A stretch of 64,000 nucleotides of DNA from Prasinococcaceae sp. CCMP 1430. Lineage: Eukaryota > Plantae > Prasinodermophyta. Below, one piece after another: positions 3,833 to 34,316 of the stretch (the stretch's first letter is position 1; each line of letters starts with the position of its first letter). A model generated the notes under the pieces. The model was not told the origin of the DNA, made no database searches, and was given only the letters and a program-made list of their open reading frames with translations. Position numbers and translations under genes: made by a program. The stretch lies in NCBI GenBank assembly GCA_013416795.1, contig RQSC01000006.1, positions 1 to 64,000 of the forward strand, in the 5' to 3' direction.

Positions 3833-6800
3833 CTACGTCTGAGTGTAGATGGGGTTGGCCATGCTCGACCAGCTCGGCGAGGGCACGCCGGTGGACGCCC
3901 CGCTCGCGCTCGTACTGTGCGTGGGCGCCCCGCCGTAAGAGGACGAGTTCGTCGGGCTCTCGATGTCAGCCAGACGCCTCTCGCCCTTCTCAAGCATGCT
4001 CTCCAGCGAGGCGAGCTGCTGCTCGATGGCAGTGAGCGTCGCAGCCTCGAGGCCTGGCACCGTGGGCTGGTCGGCGTCAACGTCCACAAGTGGCAGCGCA
4101 CTAAGGCTGGTCGACATCATCTCGGCCTTGAGCGCGCGCTCCTCTGCGAACTTGCGCGCCATGTTGGCGGCGTCGACCTCGCGGCGCAGTGCCTCCCGCT
4201 CCGCGCGCAGCCGATCCGACTCTGCGCCCGTGAGCATCTTGCCCCCCTGCGAGGAACCGCCAGCGCGCGTGGCCTCATCGAGCTGTCTTCGCAGCTCTTC
4301 GGCGTCCACGCGCAGCCGCGCGGCCTCGCGTTCGGCAGCGGCTGCGCGCATGCCTCGCGCCTCGGCGTCCGCAATGCGCTCCTCGATGGCGTCGTTCCAC
4401 ACGGACGCGCTGCCAGACGCGCCCGCCCGCTCGGACTGCAGGGAGGCCAGGGCGGCGGACGCCGCGCGCCGCGCAGCTTCGGCAGCCTCCGCGCGCTCGC
4501 GCTCGCGTCTTGCCTCCTCTGCGGCATCACGGGCGCCCACAAGCGCGCGATCGCGCGCCACCGTTGCAGCCTCGCAACGCTCGCGCTGGAGGGCGGCGTC
4601 CGCGAGCGCCTCCTCGCGCTGCGCAATGAGCAGGGCGGAATCGCGTCGGGACACGCCCGGCGACCCCGATGCCTCCTGTGTGCTGAGGCTCAAGCTCGCC
4701 TCCGCCGCAGCAGCTGATCTGGACGCCGCGAGGGCTTCTGCCTGCGCGCGAGCTACCTTCGCCGCCGCCAGCTCGGCCGCCATGGCCTCAATACGCATCT
4801 CAGCCTCAGTGGCCGCGACGGCCATCGCGTCCTTGGCCTGCGCCTCAACGAGTGCCGCGCGGCGCGCCTCGTCGAGCTGCTGGCGCAGGCGCTCGGCCAC
4901 GCCGCGCTGCTCGTTTGCCTCGGCAAGCGCAGCGCGCGCGCGCTGGCTCTCCGCCTCGGCGCTTGCGGAGCTGTTGCCGAGTGCGAGCGACGCCTCGCGC
5001 GCCGCCGCCGCTGCGTCGGTGCGCGCGGCGGCTGCCGCAAGTGCGGCTCGCGCGTCCGACGCGCGCACTGCCTCCTCGGCGGCCTCAAGCTTGGCACGCA
5101 ACGACGCAAGCTCAGACTCAGCCGTGTCGCGCTTTGCCTGAGCCTGCGCGGCACTCTGGCGGGCCGACGTGGCCTCGTCCTCGAGCGCGCGGGCGCGCGC
5201 GGCGGCGTTGTCCGCCTCAGTGCGCGCAGAGCGCAGCGCCTCGTCAGATGCCTGCCTGGCCGCCTGAGCGGTGCGTGCGGCCTCCGCGGAGGCGCCACCC
5301 GAGCGCTTGAGCACCTCAAGCTCTGCCTGCAGCCCGTTGAGCTCCGATGCCTTGGTGGCGAGCGTCAGTGTGGCCTTTGCTGCCTCGCTCTCGGCCTCGG
5401 CGCGCGCCTTGCTTGCATTGGCCACGCGCTGCGCCGCCTCCGCCTCGGCCACCTCGATGCGTCGCTCCAGCGAGTCACGCTCAGACTTAAGCTCGCTGCA
5501 CAAGGCTCTCGCTACCTCGAGTTCGCGCTCGACATCGACGGTGCGAGCGCGCTCAGCGGCAGTCTGAGCGGTCGCCTCGCGCCCTGCGGTCATGGCACGG
5601 TCCAAGCGCGTCTCTGATGCCTGCAGCTGCAAGCGGAGCGCGTCGGTTTCGGCCTTAGCATCGGCAACGCCTTGCGCGGAACGCCCCTCGGCCTTTGCGC
5701 GCTCCCTTCTAGTATCTGCGAGGAGTGCCTCGTGCTCGCGATCAAGGGCCTCGATCTCGCGAGCGAGCGCCTCCGCGCGCGCCTCGGCCATGACGACGCG
5801 CTCCTCCGCTGCCTGCACCTCGGTTAGACGCTGTTGCCGCGCGCGATCGAGATCCTTCGCCGCGGCATCGCGTGCTCGCGCCGATGCGGCAGCACTGCTC
5901 TCCGCAGCCTCCATGAGCGCGCGCACCTCCCTTTTGGCCTCCTCAAGCTTCACCGACACCTCGCGCAGTTGCCTCGCCGACTCCATGCCCTGGCGTTCGG
6001 CGGCCGCGCGCGCCGCGTCGGCCTGCCTGACCCGTGCGCGCCAGCCGTTCTCGTGATTCTCGCGAGCCTTGAGCGCCGAAAGCTCGCGATCCCCGTTGAT
6101 TGCCGCCGCGACGGCGCGCTCCGCGCGCTCGGCCTCGAGTGTTGCCGAGAGCTGCTTGCAGCGCAGCTGCAGCTCCTCCACCTCGCCCCCTGCTGAGACG
6201 ACGAGGTCCTGCCGCTCGTTGCGCTCAGTCGCGATTGCGCGCTCGGCGTCTTCGGCGCGCGCGAGAGCTTCTTCCGCCCGCTCCTCTGCTTCGCCGAGCA
6301 GCCGCGTGAGCATTTCGCGTTCCTCCTCTAGCAGCGCGAGCGACTCGTGCGTCGCCGCCTCGGCCGCGTCTGCCCCCGCGCGCTTGCCGGGAGAGACCGG
6401 TGCGTGCAGCGCGGGAGACGCCCCGACACCCATCGTCTCCTGCCGCTCGATGAGCTCCTGCATGGCCCCCACGCAGCGCTCGAGGTTGCTGAGCACCTCC
6501 CCCGGGGTGTCGTACGGCTCCTCGCTGGTGCCAGCGCGCACAGGCGTGCGGGCGCGCACGGGCGTGTGGGGTTCGTCGTACGTTGGCGCGGCGGTACCCG
6601 CGTCTGCTCCCGCTCCGCTGATGAGACCCATCATGCGAACCCCGCCGTAGCGCACGGCGAACTCGGCGAGGGCCAACGCAGCGAGCACGGCGCGATAGAG
6701 CGGCGTGCCTGCCGCGAGCGCCATGGACAGCGCCATCCCCGCCGCCTGCCCGCCCGGCATCACCTTCTCGAGCGCCGCAGCGCTCGCGAGCACTGCCACA

Positions 6801-30514: not shown

Positions 30515-33334
30515 GGCAAGACGGTCGTCAAGGCCAAGCTGGGTGGGAGCAACAGCATGGTGTACGACGAGAAGGTGCGCGCGCGCAAGCCCGCGCGGCC
30601 GCGGCGGCGGCGGCGCGGACGCCAACGGGGCGTTTTCCGCGCCTGTTGAGCGCGCTCGCAGAGCCTGGCTGCGCCGCAGCCTCGTCGTCGAGCGGAGCGA
30701 AGCATCACGCGTACACAATGGCGACGCGTTCGAGGTGGCCCGCGCGCCAACTCTACGGGACGCGCGACGCTGCGGCGCCCCGCCCGCGTGCGCTGACGCG
30801 CCTGCTGCCGCTCGGCTCCGCAGCGCAAGATGTGGGTGGAGAAGGGCGCAAAGGGCGGCGGTGGCGACGCCGGCCCTAGCGACGACGACGCGTTGCCACC
30901 GCCACCGGTGCTCAAGCGCACATCATCCGCGCCCTCAACGTCTCCAACATCCCAGGGGGGCGACCACTCGTGGGGTGAGGCGGCCGGCAGCGCCAATGGG
31001 AACGGGAACGGGAGTGCCAGCGCCGGTCCGCCAAGCATGACGTCGTCCGCGTCGTCTGGGAACATGTACCGCGCTGCCGGTGGTGCGGGGCGGCGGCCGC
31101 GATACGCAGCGTCGCCATTTGCGCCAAAGGCCGCGGGTGCCACAAACGCAACCGGGGGGCCGAATGCGCTGCTTCCTGGGAGCGCTTTCGCAGTTGGTGG
31201 CGGTGCCAAGCCGGGCGTTGCGCCACCGACTTTCTTCGTGCCGGGCCCGGCGGCCGCAGCCGAGGCGGACGCCGGGGCGGGCCCTGCGCCGACGCCTGTA
31301 CCGGCCCCTGCGGCTTGGGCATCGACCGGGACTGCTGACGGCGACCAGCCCTACAGCAACGGAAACGGGTCGCTGGCGCGAGCGAGTGCCGGCGGCGAGC
31401 AGCCCATGGAGCCAACAGCAGCGCCCGAGACTGCGAGCGCTGTTGATGAGCAGCCAGCGCAATTCGAGCCGATAGTCGCACCTGAGACCCCCATGCAACA
31501 GCCTGTGGGGGGGCTCACGGCCAGCACGATCTCTGACTACGATCTCGCCCAGATCCAGCAAGTCGCCAACTTGGTGGCCGATACCACCCCCAACAAAGCC
31601 GCGAGGGCGCGGTCCGCTCAGACGCACGCGTCGCAAGAGGCCGACAACGAGGTGGAGGGGGCGCAGGAAGACGGCCAGGCAGCTGAGCCATTCGAGGGCG
31701 TGGCGGACGGGGCCTCTGTTGCCGAGAGCACCGGAGCTGCGTCGCAGCTGGCCCAAGGATGGGCCGAATACTACACGGAGGAGGGGCACCTGTACTACTA
31801 CAACGAACAGACGGGCGAATCCTCTTGGTACCCTCCGGAGGGGTTCCAGAGCCAGCAGACGCAGCAGTACAACAATGCAGCCTATGAGGAGGGCGGGGGG
31901 CAGCAGCAGGAGCAGCAGCAGGAGCAGCAGCAGGAGGAGCAAGGAGAGCAGGATCAACACCAGTACGACAACGCTGCCTTCGCGCCGTCGCCCGCGCAAG
32001 AGGAGGTTTCGGAGACGCTCGCGGGCGAGGCTGGCGTGGAGGTAGCCAATGCAAGCGTTGACGGGGGAGAGGAGACTGTGCAGGCAGGGCATGACTTGGA
32101 GCAGCAGGCGACTGCCCAAGTGCACGCCGACTCGACCGCGCGTGCGCCCGAGGAAGATGGCGCGGCGCACGTGCAAGGCGCGGTGGCAGGACAGCCTCGC
32201 GCGCGGCCGTTGACCGTCGACTTGTCCGAACAAGGAATGGGTCATATGGAGCAACAGCCTGGACCTCATGACGCGCACGGGCACTTCCCTCAGGTGGCTT
32301 TCACATCGCATCACAGCCGTGTGGACAGCAAGACCGAGATGGCGATGGATTTCTTCGAGAGCTTGAGCCCGAATTCCCAGGCGAGGCACGCGTCTCGCGG
32401 CTACGTGGGCGAGGTGGGCGCCGTCGCTGCTGTCGGCGCACTCGATGCGCCACAGGCCACGGTTGGTCAAGCAGCGGAGGAGACTGTCGATCCAGCCGCC
32501 GCACCCGCGGTTCCAGCTGTCACTGCGGATGCGCCAGCGGCGATGGTCGCACCTGCGGAGCATCAGGAGGCAGGCCAGGCTGATGTTGTCGCAGAGACGC
32601 CACCCGAGGATGGCGGGCCCGTTGCGGAGATGTCCGTCGGCGACGCCATCAACGCGCAAATCAGCGGCGCTGTCGGTTCAGCCCTCGATCCCCACGGAGT
32701 GGAGAGCGGCGCTCGCCGGCGGCTCGAGCTTGAGCAGCCGCTGCCTGCGCCTGCGCCTGCGGTGGCCACGGCAACGACTGCGCACGGTGCGGTCGACGAG
32801 CACGAAAGCCTCGCTGGTGCGGAGACGCGAGCCCGCGAGGCTGAGGCCCGTGCCGCAGCGCTCGAGGCGCAGGTGGCGGCGCTCAAGCTCGAGTGCGACA
32901 CTCACATCAAGCTGTGTGCTGCGGCTGCGCGCGAGCGCGATGATGCGCTGGCCGAGTGCGCCTCCGCGGCGGCGGCGGCGGCTGAGGCCGCCCGAGCTGA
33001 GACGCGTGCGGACGCTGACGAGGAGATGGAAGACCTGGTTGTGTGCCTCGGCCAGGAGGAGGAGAAAGTGTCTCGCCTTTCGGCAAAGCTTGCAGAGCTC
33101 GGCGTTGATGCGTACGAGCTCATCGCCGACCTCGACGTCATCACTCCGTCAGATGCAGGCGACGGCGCCGATGAGGGCGTGGACGGCTCAGCTGATGTGC
33201 ACCCCGGCACGGCCGAGGACGCGGCTGGCGTCGCCTCGCCGCTGACGCAAGCAATGTCCATGGCCGACGAGATCCCGGAGCCGCCCGCAGCGCTCCCGCT
33301 CCCGAACATGCCACCCGGCATGGTAGGGCCCTAA
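30515..33334 (+). CDS. Sec16-C-terminus-like region + WW domain + Uso1/p115 C-terminal coiled coil (5' part probably in gap)
   Basis: Exon 30515-30574 and intron 30575-30823 give KAKLGGSNSMVYDEKRKMWVEKG...ALPPPP; then RPRY and PTFFVP; WW domain GWAEYYTEEGHLYYYNEQTGESSWYPP; C-terminal EMEDLVVCLGQEEEKVSRLSAKLAELGVD; TGTAA at 33350. Confidence 0.75.
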
Positions 33335-33413: not shown

Positions 33414-34316
33414 TCACTCGAGCAGGGCACGTTTCTGCCCCGGGTGCTGCGGGAGAGGCTGCGCCTGTTGGCCCCAGTACGAGTGTCTGTGCGGGTCGTG
33501 TTGGCGTTTCGTGACTCTCGTTTGGGCCGAATCTCTGGCAGCGCCGAAAGCGTTGGCCGGGCGCTCCGCGAGCGTCGTCGCCTTTGGCGCTGAGGCCGCT
33601 GCCAGCGCCGCGGCGAAGCGCGCACGCCTCCCGGCCTCTGATTCCGATTCCGGGGAGGGGTTGGTGGCTTCGACCTCCCCGCCCGTCTCGCTGGCCGAAT
33701 CGGCGCTATCCGGCACAGGGTCCTCCTCGTCGGTCGTGGCGGGCGCCGATGCGCCGGGTTGTGCGGCCCGGGTGGGCGGAGGCGTGGTCATCGCGTCCAT
33801 TGCCTCCTCGGCAGCAAACATCGACGACGTGATGCGCGCCAGGGTTTGCTCGAGCTCGAGCGCGCGCGCCTCCGCCGCATGGCGCAGGCGCCTCTCCTCG
33901 CGCAGCGCGTCCGACGTCCCCGTGAGAGGTGTCGCTGGCGTCGCGGGGGAGGCACCGCCGCCGGGCGTCGCTTGGACGCTCTCCCCGCCCCCACGCGCCT
34001 CCCCGCCCTGGCCGGGCGTTGCGGCCCGCTGGGCGCTCGGCGGGCCCTCGCTCATGCTTATTTCCCTTTCGAGGCGCATGCGCGCCGAGCGCTCCTCATC
34101 GAGCGCAGCCTCAGCCTCGGCGAGCTTCCGCCGCAGCTCGCCCGTGCGCGCGTGCATCTCCTCGAGCGCGCGCGCGGCCTGCTCGCCGGCGTCCTCGGTG
34201 CGGCGCAGGCGCTCGGCGCACGCAGAGTGACGCCCACAGGCGCCACGGCTGTGTGAATTCGAGAAAACAAGCCACGCCGCAGCGCGCGGGGATGCGCAGC
34301 GCAGCACCACCTGCAC
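33414..34316 (-). CDS. Coiled-coil/disordered coding region, gene boundaries uncertain
   Basis: LEEMHARTGELRRKLAEAEAALDEERSARMRLEREI and EERRLRHAAEARALELEQTL; no ATG, so probably a downstream exon. Confidence 0.55.
   Translation of the reverse strand: MQVVLRCASPRAAAWLVFSNSHSRGACGRHSACAERLRRTEDAGEQAARALEEMHARTGELRRKLAEAEAALDEERSARMRLEREISMSEGPPSAQRAATPGQGGEARGGGESVQATPGGGASPATPATPLTGTSDALREERRLRHAAEARALELEQTLARITSSMFAAEEAMDAMTTPPPTRAAQPGASAPATTDEEDPVPDSADSASETGGEVEATNPSPESESEAGRRARFAAALAAASAPKATTLAERPANAFGAARDSAQTRVTKRQHDPHRHSYWGQQAQPLPQHPGQKRALLE

What the first reader, a model, noticed from the sequence alone, without database searches (positions are those of the whole stretch)
30515..33334. 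Sec16 C-terminus + WW + Uso1/p115 C-terminus in one protein: a possible ER-exit/Golgi-tether hybrid
The spliced motif KAKLG.SNSMVYDEKRKMWVEKG...ALPPPP, followed by R.RY and FFVP, matches my recollection of the conserved Sec16 (MAG5-type) C-terminal region. The same uninterrupted ORF then has a WW domain and ends with EDLVVCLGQEEEKVSRLSAKLAELGVD, typical of the plant golgin GC6/p115 tail. These are normally separate COPII-scaffold and tethering proteins; a fusion would physically couple budding to tethering.
Basis: partly seen in the sequence, partly recalled or inferred. Interest (0 to 1): 0.72.

Follow-up and report, generated by a model that had tools for sequence, protein, structure and literature searches.

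The report
Sec16-tail, WW, p115-tail mosaic protein
A small green alga (Prasinoderma coloniale) has a stand-alone, mostly disordered protein built from the tail of the ER-exit scaffold Sec16, one WW domain and the tail of the Golgi tether p115; it contains neither protein's working core, so it is a new lineage-specific domain mosaic and not a fusion of the two machines.

Summary
Window 30515-30574 and 30824-33334 are the last two exons of Prasinoderma coloniale gene PRCOL_00002082.

- **WW and p115 tail:** the ORF has a WW domain (37 bits) and a Uso1_p115_C region (38.6 bits). Both pass Pfam's cut-offs.
[quoted passage not shown] A profile of 32 real Sec16 tails scores it 30.2 bits (E 3.6e-5 at Z = 1e6; best unrelated decoy 10.9 bits). 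hhalign gives 96.5%, E 9e-10.

- There is no Sec16 central domain and no p115 head.
- In a related alga, genomic contigs and a spliced transcript-like contig show the gene starts at the CTR. An in-frame stop lies two codons before the ATG, and a divergent neighbour gene starts about 430 nt upstream.
- The missing 20-codon first exon lies in gap n30379.
- An exhaustive search of 1.84 billion proteins found this architecture in only two clusters, both Prasinoderma-like.

The likely role is an ER-exit-site adaptor, which is inferred and not shown. The scan noted this same stretch once before (s1-371031). Read-level evidence could not be obtained.

The parts
29009..30049 (-). Neighbour gene, head-to-head: a Sec22-like longin R-SNARE in three exons (30049-29810, 29555-29400, 29296-29009).
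   Evidence: The Pfam Longin domain hits the first-exon ORF. tblastn with the relative's Longin+Synaptobrevin protein from L003 gives 82-88% identity in three pieces. The name Sec22 comes from my knowledge of its N-terminal signature and was not tested.
30098..30378 (+). A 281-nt fragment of eukaryotic LSU rRNA that abuts the gap. It is probably a contig-end artefact and not part of the gene.
   Evidence: Rfam LSU_rRNA_eukarya, 235.8 bits, model positions 1703-1983, cut at both ends.
30379..30379 (.). Assembly gap (a single N). It hides exon 1 (20 codons, MAGGDGDAAQKAGFFSMFGG in the public model) and the 5' part of intron 1.
   Evidence: Exon 1 of P0002 is found nowhere in the window (tblastn). 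TARA contigs L007 and L008 match from 30380 on and carry 16-17 different bases to its left.
30380..30514 (+). The 3' end of intron 1, ending in the acceptor CGCAG.
   Evidence: Sequence. In relative L004 the homologous intron runs 5114-5972.
30515..30574 (+). Exon 2: GKTVVKAKLGGSNSMVYDEK, the first half of the Sec16 CTR core motif.
   Evidence: It is 75% identical to the homologous exon in L002-L005.
30575..30823 (+). Intron 2 (249 nt, GT..AG, phase 0).
   Evidence: Sequence. The junction is present in the public model P0002. The homologous intron is removed in the spliced contig L006.
30824..33334 (+). Exon 3, 836 codons plus TAA. It holds the rest of the CTR, the WW domain, the disordered linkers and the p115-type tail.
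30824..31249 (+). Remainder of the Sec16 CTR-like region: RKMWVEKG, ALPPPP (30890-30907), SSGNMY, RRPRYAASPF (31088-31120) and APPTFFVPGP (31220-31249).
   Evidence: Sec16-tail HMM and hhalign. It is collinear with stramenopile and fungal Sec16 tails. The blocks are invariant between P. coloniale and its relative.
31541..31603 (+). Conserved block DLAQIQQVANLVADTTPNKAA of unknown role, predicted helical.
   Evidence: conserved. (helix at P0002 residues 278-294, low confidence).
31748..31837 (+). WW domain (GWAEYYTEEGHLYYYNEQTGESSWYPP).
   Evidence: Pfam WW, 37 bits. The nearest solved structures are PRPF40A/FBP11, WBP4 and TCERG1 WW domains. AF2 pLDDT is 73-78.
31867..32055 (+). An in-frame 189-nt stretch that the public model removes as an intron. 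It is probably coding: Q/E-rich, with two YxNAA[YF] motifs (31868-31888 and 31964-31984).
   Evidence: The homologous stretch and its motifs are kept in the relative's spliced contig and protein.
32312..32383 (+). Conserved block HSRVDSKTEMAMDFFESLSPNSQA. The core DFFESLS resembles an FFAT (VAP-binding) motif.
   Evidence: It is nearly invariant between the two species. The FFAT reading comes from my knowledge of the EFFDAxE consensus and was not tested.
32816..33133 (+). p115/Uso1 C-terminal region: a roughly 100-residue helix ending in EDLVVCLGQEEEKVSRLSAKLAELGVD (33029-33109), followed by an acidic stretch.
   Evidence: Pfam Uso1_p115_C, 38.6 bits. It is 51% identical over 53 residues to the p115-like tail of P0126. 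AF2 predicts a helix at P0002 residues 636-735 with pLDDT 74-91.
33236..33331 (+). Conserved C-terminal peptide PL.QA...IP.PPA.LPLP, proline-rich. It is a possible ligand for a WW domain.
   Evidence: Conserved. The ligand idea is inference.

Best explanation
**What it is.** This is the 3' 2.8 kb of a real, expressed, stand-alone gene, PRCOL_00002082 of Prasinoderma coloniale. With the disputed 189 nt kept, the protein is about 876 residues. It is a lineage-specific mosaic with three short folded or motif modules strung on long disordered linkers:

1. At the very N-terminus, a copy of the whole Sec16 C-terminal conserved region (CTR).
2. One WW domain.
3. The last coiled-coil segment and conserved tail of p115/Uso1.

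It lacks the Sec16 central domain and the p115 head. It is therefore neither a Sec16 nor a p115.

**Shown:**

- the three homologies;
- the gene start at the CTR in relatives;
- conservation of the modules across about 50% sequence divergence;
- restriction of the architecture to Prasinoderma-like algae.

**Inferred mechanism.** The CTR module docks the protein on Sec23 and/or Sec12 at ER exit sites, as the CTR does in yeast and human Sec16 (PMC3275590). The C-terminal helix dimerises. The p115-type tail and the WW domain recruit further partners: whatever binds the green-lineage p115 tail, and proline-rich COPII or tether proteins. The protein would then act as an adaptor or regulator at the ER-Golgi interface. 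It could also compete with Sec16 and p115 for their tail partners.

**Origin (inference).** Duplication and shuffling of the 3' ends of Sec16 and p115.
For: **Identity**
- The organism and gene come from the hit to EukProt PRCOL_00002082-RA, which is 100% identical over the shared parts.

**The three homologies**
- WW and Uso1_p115_C are both above Pfam's gathering scores. The same two domains are found in the relative P0161.
- For the CTR, the motif sits near the C-terminus of 32 Sec16 proteins from diatoms, fungi and insects.
- The Sec16-tail HMM gives 30.2 bits (P0002) and 25.4 bits (P0161), against 10.9 bits for the best unrelated decoy.
- hhalign gives 96.5%, E 9e-10.
- The alignment is collinear and includes the terminal PPxF.(V)F.P element.

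**Stand-alone gene**
- Pfam finds no Sec16 or p115-head domain.
- tblastn with a Sec16 central domain finds nothing in the window or in L001-L005.
- Exon 1 of the relative starts at ATG with TGA two codons upstream.
- The spliced contig L006 carries one 995-aa ORF with the same upstream stop. It is collinear with genomic L004 up to the divergent TPT gene.

**One gene, under selection**
- There is a single ORF in both species. Seven conserved blocks are separated by diverged linkers.
- Against TARA variants that are 99.2% identical, 9-10 codons differ synonymously and 10-11 non-synonymously. By my rough count of sites that is a dN/dS of about 0.4.

**Expression**
- Marine metatranscriptome runs hold 25-70% of its sampled words.

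**Rarity**
- phmmer over 1.84 billion representatives found the whole architecture only in P0002 and P0003.

**Structure**
- AF2 gives pLDDT below 50 for 646 of 813 residues. The ordered parts are a beta-hairpin on the YDEK.K.WV core, the WW domain and a 100-residue helix.

**CTR function**
- PMC3275590 reports that the CTR binds Sec12 and Sec23 and is essential in yeast.
Against: - No localisation or binding data exist, so the ER-exit-site role rests only on homology of short motifs.
- The CTR match is to a low-complexity, proline-rich region. HMMER's default bias filter drops it, and it is seen only with --max.
- Exon 1 of P. coloniale itself is not in the window, so its start rests on the public model and on the relative.
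- The transcript-like contig L006 also spans the neighbouring gene, so it is not a clean single-mRNA contig.
- Green plants are not known to have GM130 or giantin, the known partners of the p115 acidic tail (my knowledge). The tail's partner here is therefore unknown.
- I could not check whether P. coloniale has a canonical p115, or whether its canonical Sec16 keeps its own CTR.
Confidence: 0.72

Rival explanations
1. It is the 3' end of a full-length Sec16 gene whose central domain lies in or beyond gap n30379. That would make it a true Sec16-p115 fusion.
For: - An acceptor site sits at 30514/30515, and the upstream exon is missing from the window.
- In every Sec16 examined, the CTR sits at the C-terminus.
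Against: - The public model adds only 20 residues and starts with Met.
- In the relative, the homologous Met is preceded by an in-frame stop, both in genomic DNA and in the spliced contig.
- In the relative, a divergent gene starts 430-1250 nt upstream.
- No central-domain signal is found in any fetched locus.
Confidence: 0.05
2. It works. The CTR end holds COPII (Sec23/Sec12) while the p115-type end engages the Golgi-side tethering machinery, so one molecule physically couples vesicle budding to tethering.
For: - Both tail modules are real.
- They are separated by about 500 disordered residues plus a 100-residue helix that could span a distance.
- The gene sits head-to-head with a Sec22-like ER-Golgi SNARE in P. 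coloniale and in L003.
- The p115 acidic C-terminus is a partner-binding site in mammals (PMC2175190).
Against: - The p115 parts that are generally held to carry out tethering are absent. These are the Rab1-binding head and the SNARE-binding CC1; their roles are from my knowledge and from the abstract of PMC3696062.
- No Golgi-side receptor for the tail is known in the green lineage (my knowledge).
- The head-to-head neighbour is TPT, not SEC22, in L004 and L006.
Confidence: 0.15
3. It is a decaying by-product of partial duplications of Sec16 and p115 and has no function of its own.
For: - Most of the protein is low-complexity and predicted disordered.
- Among near-identical TARA variants, non-synonymous changes are about as numerous as synonymous ones.
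- One TARA variant (L008) has the ORF called in two pieces.
Against: - The intact ORF is kept in two species at about 50% identity, with all motif blocks invariant and only the linkers diverged.
- It is found in metatranscriptome runs and in a spliced contig.
Confidence: 0.06
4. It is a gene-model or assembly artefact in which two adjacent genes are read as one.
For: - The scaffold has a gap and an rRNA fragment just upstream.
- The public model contains a doubtful intron.
Against: - Exon 3 is one 2.5-kb open frame with no stop. It is identical in structure in four independent TARA contigs and in the relative.
- The CTR, the WW domain and the p115 tail all lie downstream of the gap, on one contig.
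Confidence: 0.02

Closest known systems
Sec16 C-terminal conserved region (CTR) of fungal, animal and stramenopile Sec16 (for example Pichia and human Sec16A; PMC3275590)
   Same: The elements are the same and in the same order:
- an aromatic-Gly patch (GFFSMFGG against WFGGG);
- AKLG-x6-YDEK-x-K-x-WV;
- a PPPP run;
- an RRxRY element;
- the terminal PPxF.F.P.
   Different: - Here the CTR is at the N-terminus of an 850-1000-residue protein. In Sec16 it is at the C-terminus of a 1200-3600-residue protein.
- There is no central conserved domain.
- Binding to Sec23 or Sec12 was not tested.
p115/Uso1 (plant GC6/MAG4) C-terminal region, Pfam PF04871
   Same: - The final coiled-coil segment and the motif DL(L/V)VCLGQEE.KV..L..KL.ELG.D, followed by acidic residues.
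- 38.6 bits against PF04871.
- 51% identity over 53 residues to the p115-like tail of P0126.
   Different: - No armadillo head and no long CC1-CC4 rod.
- The motif is followed by about 65 further residues ending in a conserved proline-rich peptide. In p115 it lies at the extreme C-terminus.
WW-rich Sec16 proteins of diatoms (for example P0004 and P0014; NCBI names 'COPII vesicle coating [Fragilaria crotonensis]' and 'transport protein SEC16B [Seminavis robusta]')
   Same: - They combine WW domains with a Sec16 CTR in one protein.
- Their WW units (YYYNE.TGESSW.PP) are the top hits of this protein's WW domain.
   Different: - They carry up to 15 or more WW units (15 in P0004) upstream of a genuine Sec16 central domain, with the CTR last.
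- Here a single WW lies downstream of the CTR and there is no central domain.
- The high total scores come from summing many repeats, so no special kinship of the WW domains is shown.

Membership tests
Sec16 (COPII ER-exit-site scaffold) | Central conserved domain: the Sec13-binding blade plus the Sec23-binding TPR-like helices (Pfam PF12932 and PF12931). | tested here: not met
   - No such Pfam hit at E <= 10 in the 834-aa ORF or at E <= 0.01 in P0161.
- tblastn with the central domain of P0004 finds nothing in the window or in L001-L005.
- There is no room upstream in the relatives.
Sec16 (COPII ER-exit-site scaffold) | C-terminal conserved region (CTR). | tested here: met
   - HMM of 32 Sec16 tails: 30.2 bits, E 3.6e-5 at Z = 1e6.
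- hhalign: 96.5%, E 9e-10.
- Collinear alignment.
Sec16 (COPII ER-exit-site scaffold) | Binding of the CTR to Sec23 and/or Sec12, and localisation to ER exit sites. | not testable with these tools
   Needs pull-downs and imaging. The property is known for yeast and human CTRs (PMC3275590).
p115/Uso1 vesicle tether | N-terminal armadillo globular head (Pfam PF04869). | tested here: not met
   No Pfam hit. AF2 shows no folded domain of that size.
p115/Uso1 vesicle tether | Long coiled-coil rod (CC1-CC4). | tested here: not met
   Only one helix of about 100 residues is predicted (P0002 residues 636-735).
p115/Uso1 vesicle tether | C-terminal region (Pfam PF04871) with an acidic tail. | tested here: met
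   38.6 bits against a cut-off of 28.4. The relative scores 38.9 bits. An acidic stretch follows the motif (33110-33230).
WW domain proteins | WW fold with two signature Trp residues and a terminal Pro. | tested here: met
   Pfam, 37 bits. PDB WW domains match at E 1.6e-7. AF2 predicts strands with pLDDT 73-78.

The most novel reading that the evidence does not exclude
Sec16 function is split in prasinodermophytes. The CTR, which is essential in yeasts, would be supplied in trans by this protein, either because the canonical WW-bearing Sec16 of P. coloniale has lost its own tail or in regulated competition with it. The CTR would be tied to a dimeric p115-type tail, so that Sec23/Sec12 engagement at ER exit sites is directly linked to the p115 partner network. 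That would be a natural separation-of-function allele of the CTR.
Probability: 0.15. Interest if true: 0.7.

Novelty: new variant of a known kind. Interest (0 to 1): 0.45.

Why it matters
- **A natural experiment on the Sec16 CTR.** The CTR is essential in yeast, but its mechanism is poorly understood because it has only been seen attached to the giant Sec16 scaffold. Here it occurs on its own. This shows that the roughly 150-residue tail can be kept by selection without the central domain. It also offers a small, tractable protein for asking what the tail binds.
- **A handle on the p115 tail.** The pairing with the conserved green-lineage p115 tail, whose partner is unknown, gives a handle on that question too.
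- **Limits.** It remains one lineage-restricted, mostly disordered protein with no functional data. It does not merge the two machines as first proposed.

Tried and rejected
1. **Read-level check of splicing and the 5' end.** The look-up of sequencing runs worked.
   - searched 30098-30378 only.
   - One search was a local tblastn of neighbour proteins with the whole window file as subject.
2. **Looking for exon 1 in the window**. It is absent.
3. **The search for homologous proteins with the N-terminal 175 residues**. It returned only self hits. The tool needs shared 5-mers and candidates of 0.55-1.75 times the query length, so this says little.
4. **ESM Atlas look-alikes of the N-terminus**. 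Scores were 0.85-0.86 to unnamed clusters, which is uninformative.
5. **A degenerate DNA pattern for KLG-x6-YDEK-x-K-x-W over JGI metagenome contigs**. The four hits were all AT-rich chance matches with stops in frame. It did not recover even L006's sample. I therefore could not reach the canonical Sec16 of Prasinoderma.
6. **Default hmmsearch with the Sec16-tail profile** missed P0002 because of the bias filter. Running with --max recovered it.
7. **A special kinship of the WW domain with the diatom Sec16 WW arrays.** I considered this and rejected it. Per-domain identity of about 50-58% is matched by many unrelated WW proteins.
8. **Literature.** No paper mentions Prasinoderma coloniale together with Sec16, and none was found describing WW-bearing Sec16.
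Full report
**Where and what.** The window is 67% G+C. The 834-aa ORF at 30830-33334 is 100% identical over its shared parts to EukProt protein PRCOL_00002082-RA of Prasinoderma coloniale (P0002, 813 aa).
- Exon 30515-30574 encodes GKTVVKAKLGGSNSMVYDEK.
- A 249-nt GT..AG phase-0 intron follows.
- Exon 30824-33334 begins RKMWVEKG and contains ALPPPP, RRPRY and PPTFFVPGP.

**WW and p115 tail.** Pfam gives WW (residues 307-336 of the ORF, E 3.3e-9, 37.0 bits, cut-off 26.9). It also gives Uso1_p115_C (663-768, E 1.5e-9, 38.6 bits, cut-off 28.4). The motif EDLVVCLGQEEEKVSRLSAKLAELGVD is 51% identical over 53 residues to the tail of P0126. I read P0126 as a plant p115/GC6-like protein from its sequence; its only Pfam hit is Uso1_p115_C. 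The other C-terminal hits of the exhaustive search are short proteins that also match PF04871.

**Sec16 tail.** Pfam has no model for the extreme C-terminus of Sec16, so I needed real sequences.
- The top WW hit, P0004, turned out to be a diatom-type Sec16 with 15 WW domains plus PF12931.
- Searching with its central domain returned 65 Sec16 proteins from diatoms, fungi and arthropods, plus one lizard entry.
- Thirty-two of them carry [YFW]D..K.W[VIL] 110-213 residues from their C-terminus, in contexts such as WFGGGKKE...PIRAKLGE.SSFVYDPELKRWVNKK...TPPPP.
- The P. coloniale protein reads AGFFSMFGGGKTVVKAKLGGSNSMVYDEKRKMWVEKG...ALPPPP.

A profile built only from those 32 tails gave these results:
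- It found nine further Sec16 proteins that were not used to build it.
- It then scored P0002 at 30.2 bits (E 3.6e-5 at Z = 1e6; residues 10-153) and the relative P0161 at 25.4 bits.
- The next row, 11.9 bits, was the window's own exon-2 frame. The best unrelated decoy among 484 window ORFs and the other fetched proteins scored 10.9 bits.
- The match needs --max, because the default bias filter drops it.

hhalign between the two-sequence Prasinoderma alignment and 19 Sec16 tails gives 96.5% probability, E 9e-10. The alignment is collinear to the end. APPTFFVPGP lines up with the PPPTFAVFQPKP-type element that closes stramenopile Sec16 proteins. RRPRYA.SPF resembles GARRYADP of P0191, although MAFFT did not put the two in register. 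So the first 150 or so residues are a copy of the whole Sec16 tail and not just a chance motif.

**Not a truncated Sec16.** Exon 1 of the public model (MAGGDGDAAQKAGFFSMFGG) is nowhere in the window.
- Left of the single-N gap at 30379 lies a 281-nt piece of LSU rRNA (235.8 bits). Beyond that is the start of a Sec22-like gene on the other strand.
- Near-identical TARA contigs L007 and L008 match the window from 30380 and carry 16-17 different bases to its left.
- The scaffold is therefore broken exactly here.

A related alga has the same gene at about 48-50% protein identity (P0003, P0161, P0162), and its contigs are informative:
- Genomic contigs L002-L004 have exon 1 as ATG GCG GAC..., encoding MADGTGDGDAQQPRGWFGFGG.
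- A TGA lies two codons upstream, and the donor is GTGCGT.
- Contig L006 matches genomic L004 except that both introns are precisely removed. It carries one 995-aa ORF with the same upstream stop.
- In L004 and L006 a divergent triose-phosphate-translocator-family gene begins about 430 nt upstream. In L003 a Sec22-like gene begins 1250 nt upstream.
- tblastn with a Sec16 central domain finds nothing in the window or in L001-L005.

The protein therefore begins at the CTR.

**One protein, conserved in modules.** The alignment of the two species shows invariant blocks separated by diverged linkers:
- the CTR elements;
- DLAQIQQ.A.LVA.TTPNKAA;
- the WW domain;
- YxNAA[YF] motifs;
- DSKTE.AMDFFESLSP.SQA;
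- GARRRLELE plus the coiled coil and p115 motif;
- a terminal PL.QA...IP.PPA.LPLP peptide.

AF2 with this shallow alignment gives these results:
- It predicts 646 of 813 residues below pLDDT 50.
- A beta-hairpin sits on MVYDEKRKMWVE.
- The WW domain has pLDDT 73-78.
- A 100-residue helix covers residues 636-735 (pLDDT 74-91).

The 189-nt intron that the public model removes (31867-32055) is in frame. It holds the conserved YxNAA[YF] motifs, and the homologous stretch is retained in the relative's spliced contig. It is probably coding.

**Expression and selection.**
- Marine metatranscriptome runs hold 25-70% of the sampled words of the ORF.
- Against TARA variants, 9-10 codons differ synonymously and 10-11 non-synonymously. 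By a rough count of sites this is a dN/dS near 0.4.
- The read-laying step failed on a filter, so I have no read-level evidence for P. coloniale itself.

**Distribution.** phmmer of exon 3 against 1.84 billion representatives found whole-length relatives only in P0002 and P0003. All other hits cover the WW domain or the p115 tail alone.

**Mechanism.** According to PMC3275590, the Sec16 CTR binds the cytosolic domain of Sec12 in Pichia and human. It also binds Sec23 in yeast and mammals, and it is essential in yeast. The acidic C-terminus of mammalian p115 binds GM130 and giantin (PMC2175190 abstract).
- By homology, the N-terminus of this protein should dock on Sec23 or Sec12 at ER exit sites.
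- The helix should dimerise.
- The tail and the WW domain should recruit further partners. The WW domain is closest to the PRPF40A/FBP11, WBP4 and TCERG1 types.
- The conserved C-terminal PPA.LPLP peptide is a possible WW ligand. The DFFESLS block looks like an FFAT motif. Both ideas are untested and come from my knowledge.

The protein lacks the Sec16 central domain and the p115 head and rod. For that reason I read it as an adaptor or competitor at the ER-Golgi interface, not a scaffold-tether fusion.

**Rule-bound omissions.**
For spliced queries I used the public model P0002.

**Verdict.** This is a new, lineage-restricted domain architecture made of known modules. Its interest is moderate.

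Noticed in passing
window 30098-30378: A 281-nt fragment of eukaryotic LSU rRNA (model positions 1703-1983, 235.8 bits) sits between the Sec22-like gene's start and gap n30379. It is probably a contig-end misjoin.
   Followed up: partly
P0004, P0014, P0166-P0196 (proteins): Diatom-type Sec16 proteins carry large arrays of WW domains upstream of the Sec16 central domain (15 in P0004). An unchecked note of this scan (s1-371029) reports four WW domains in the P. coloniale Sec16 as well. I found no paper describing WW-bearing Sec16.
   Followed up: partly
window 31867-32055: The public gene model PRCOL_00002082-RA removes this in-frame 189-nt stretch as an intron. It encodes conserved YxNAA[YF] motifs, and the relative's spliced contig keeps the homologous stretch. 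The intron is probably a mis-prediction.
   Followed up: yes
window 32312-32383: The block DSKTEMAMDFFESLSP is nearly invariant between species. Its core DFFESLS resembles an FFAT (VAP-binding) motif, which would give an ER anchor.
   Followed up: no
window 34223-34224; L001 from 3498, L007 from 3861: Three TARA contigs that are 99.2% identical to the window from 30380 or 30727 onward all diverge completely from it after 34223, inside the minus-strand ORF 33414-34316. This is either a structural difference or a misassembly.
   Followed up: partly
L003 1-4983 versus L004 1-4863: The two contigs of the related alga are 99.5% identical from 187 nt upstream of the start codon onward, but they have different upstream neighbours. 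L003 has a Sec22-like gene, as in the window. L004 and L006 have a TPT-family transporter. One contig may be chimeric, or the strains differ.
   Followed up: partly
window 33414-34316 (minus strand): A 300-aa ORF convergent with the gene has no Pfam hit. It is also called in the TARA contigs.
   Followed up: no
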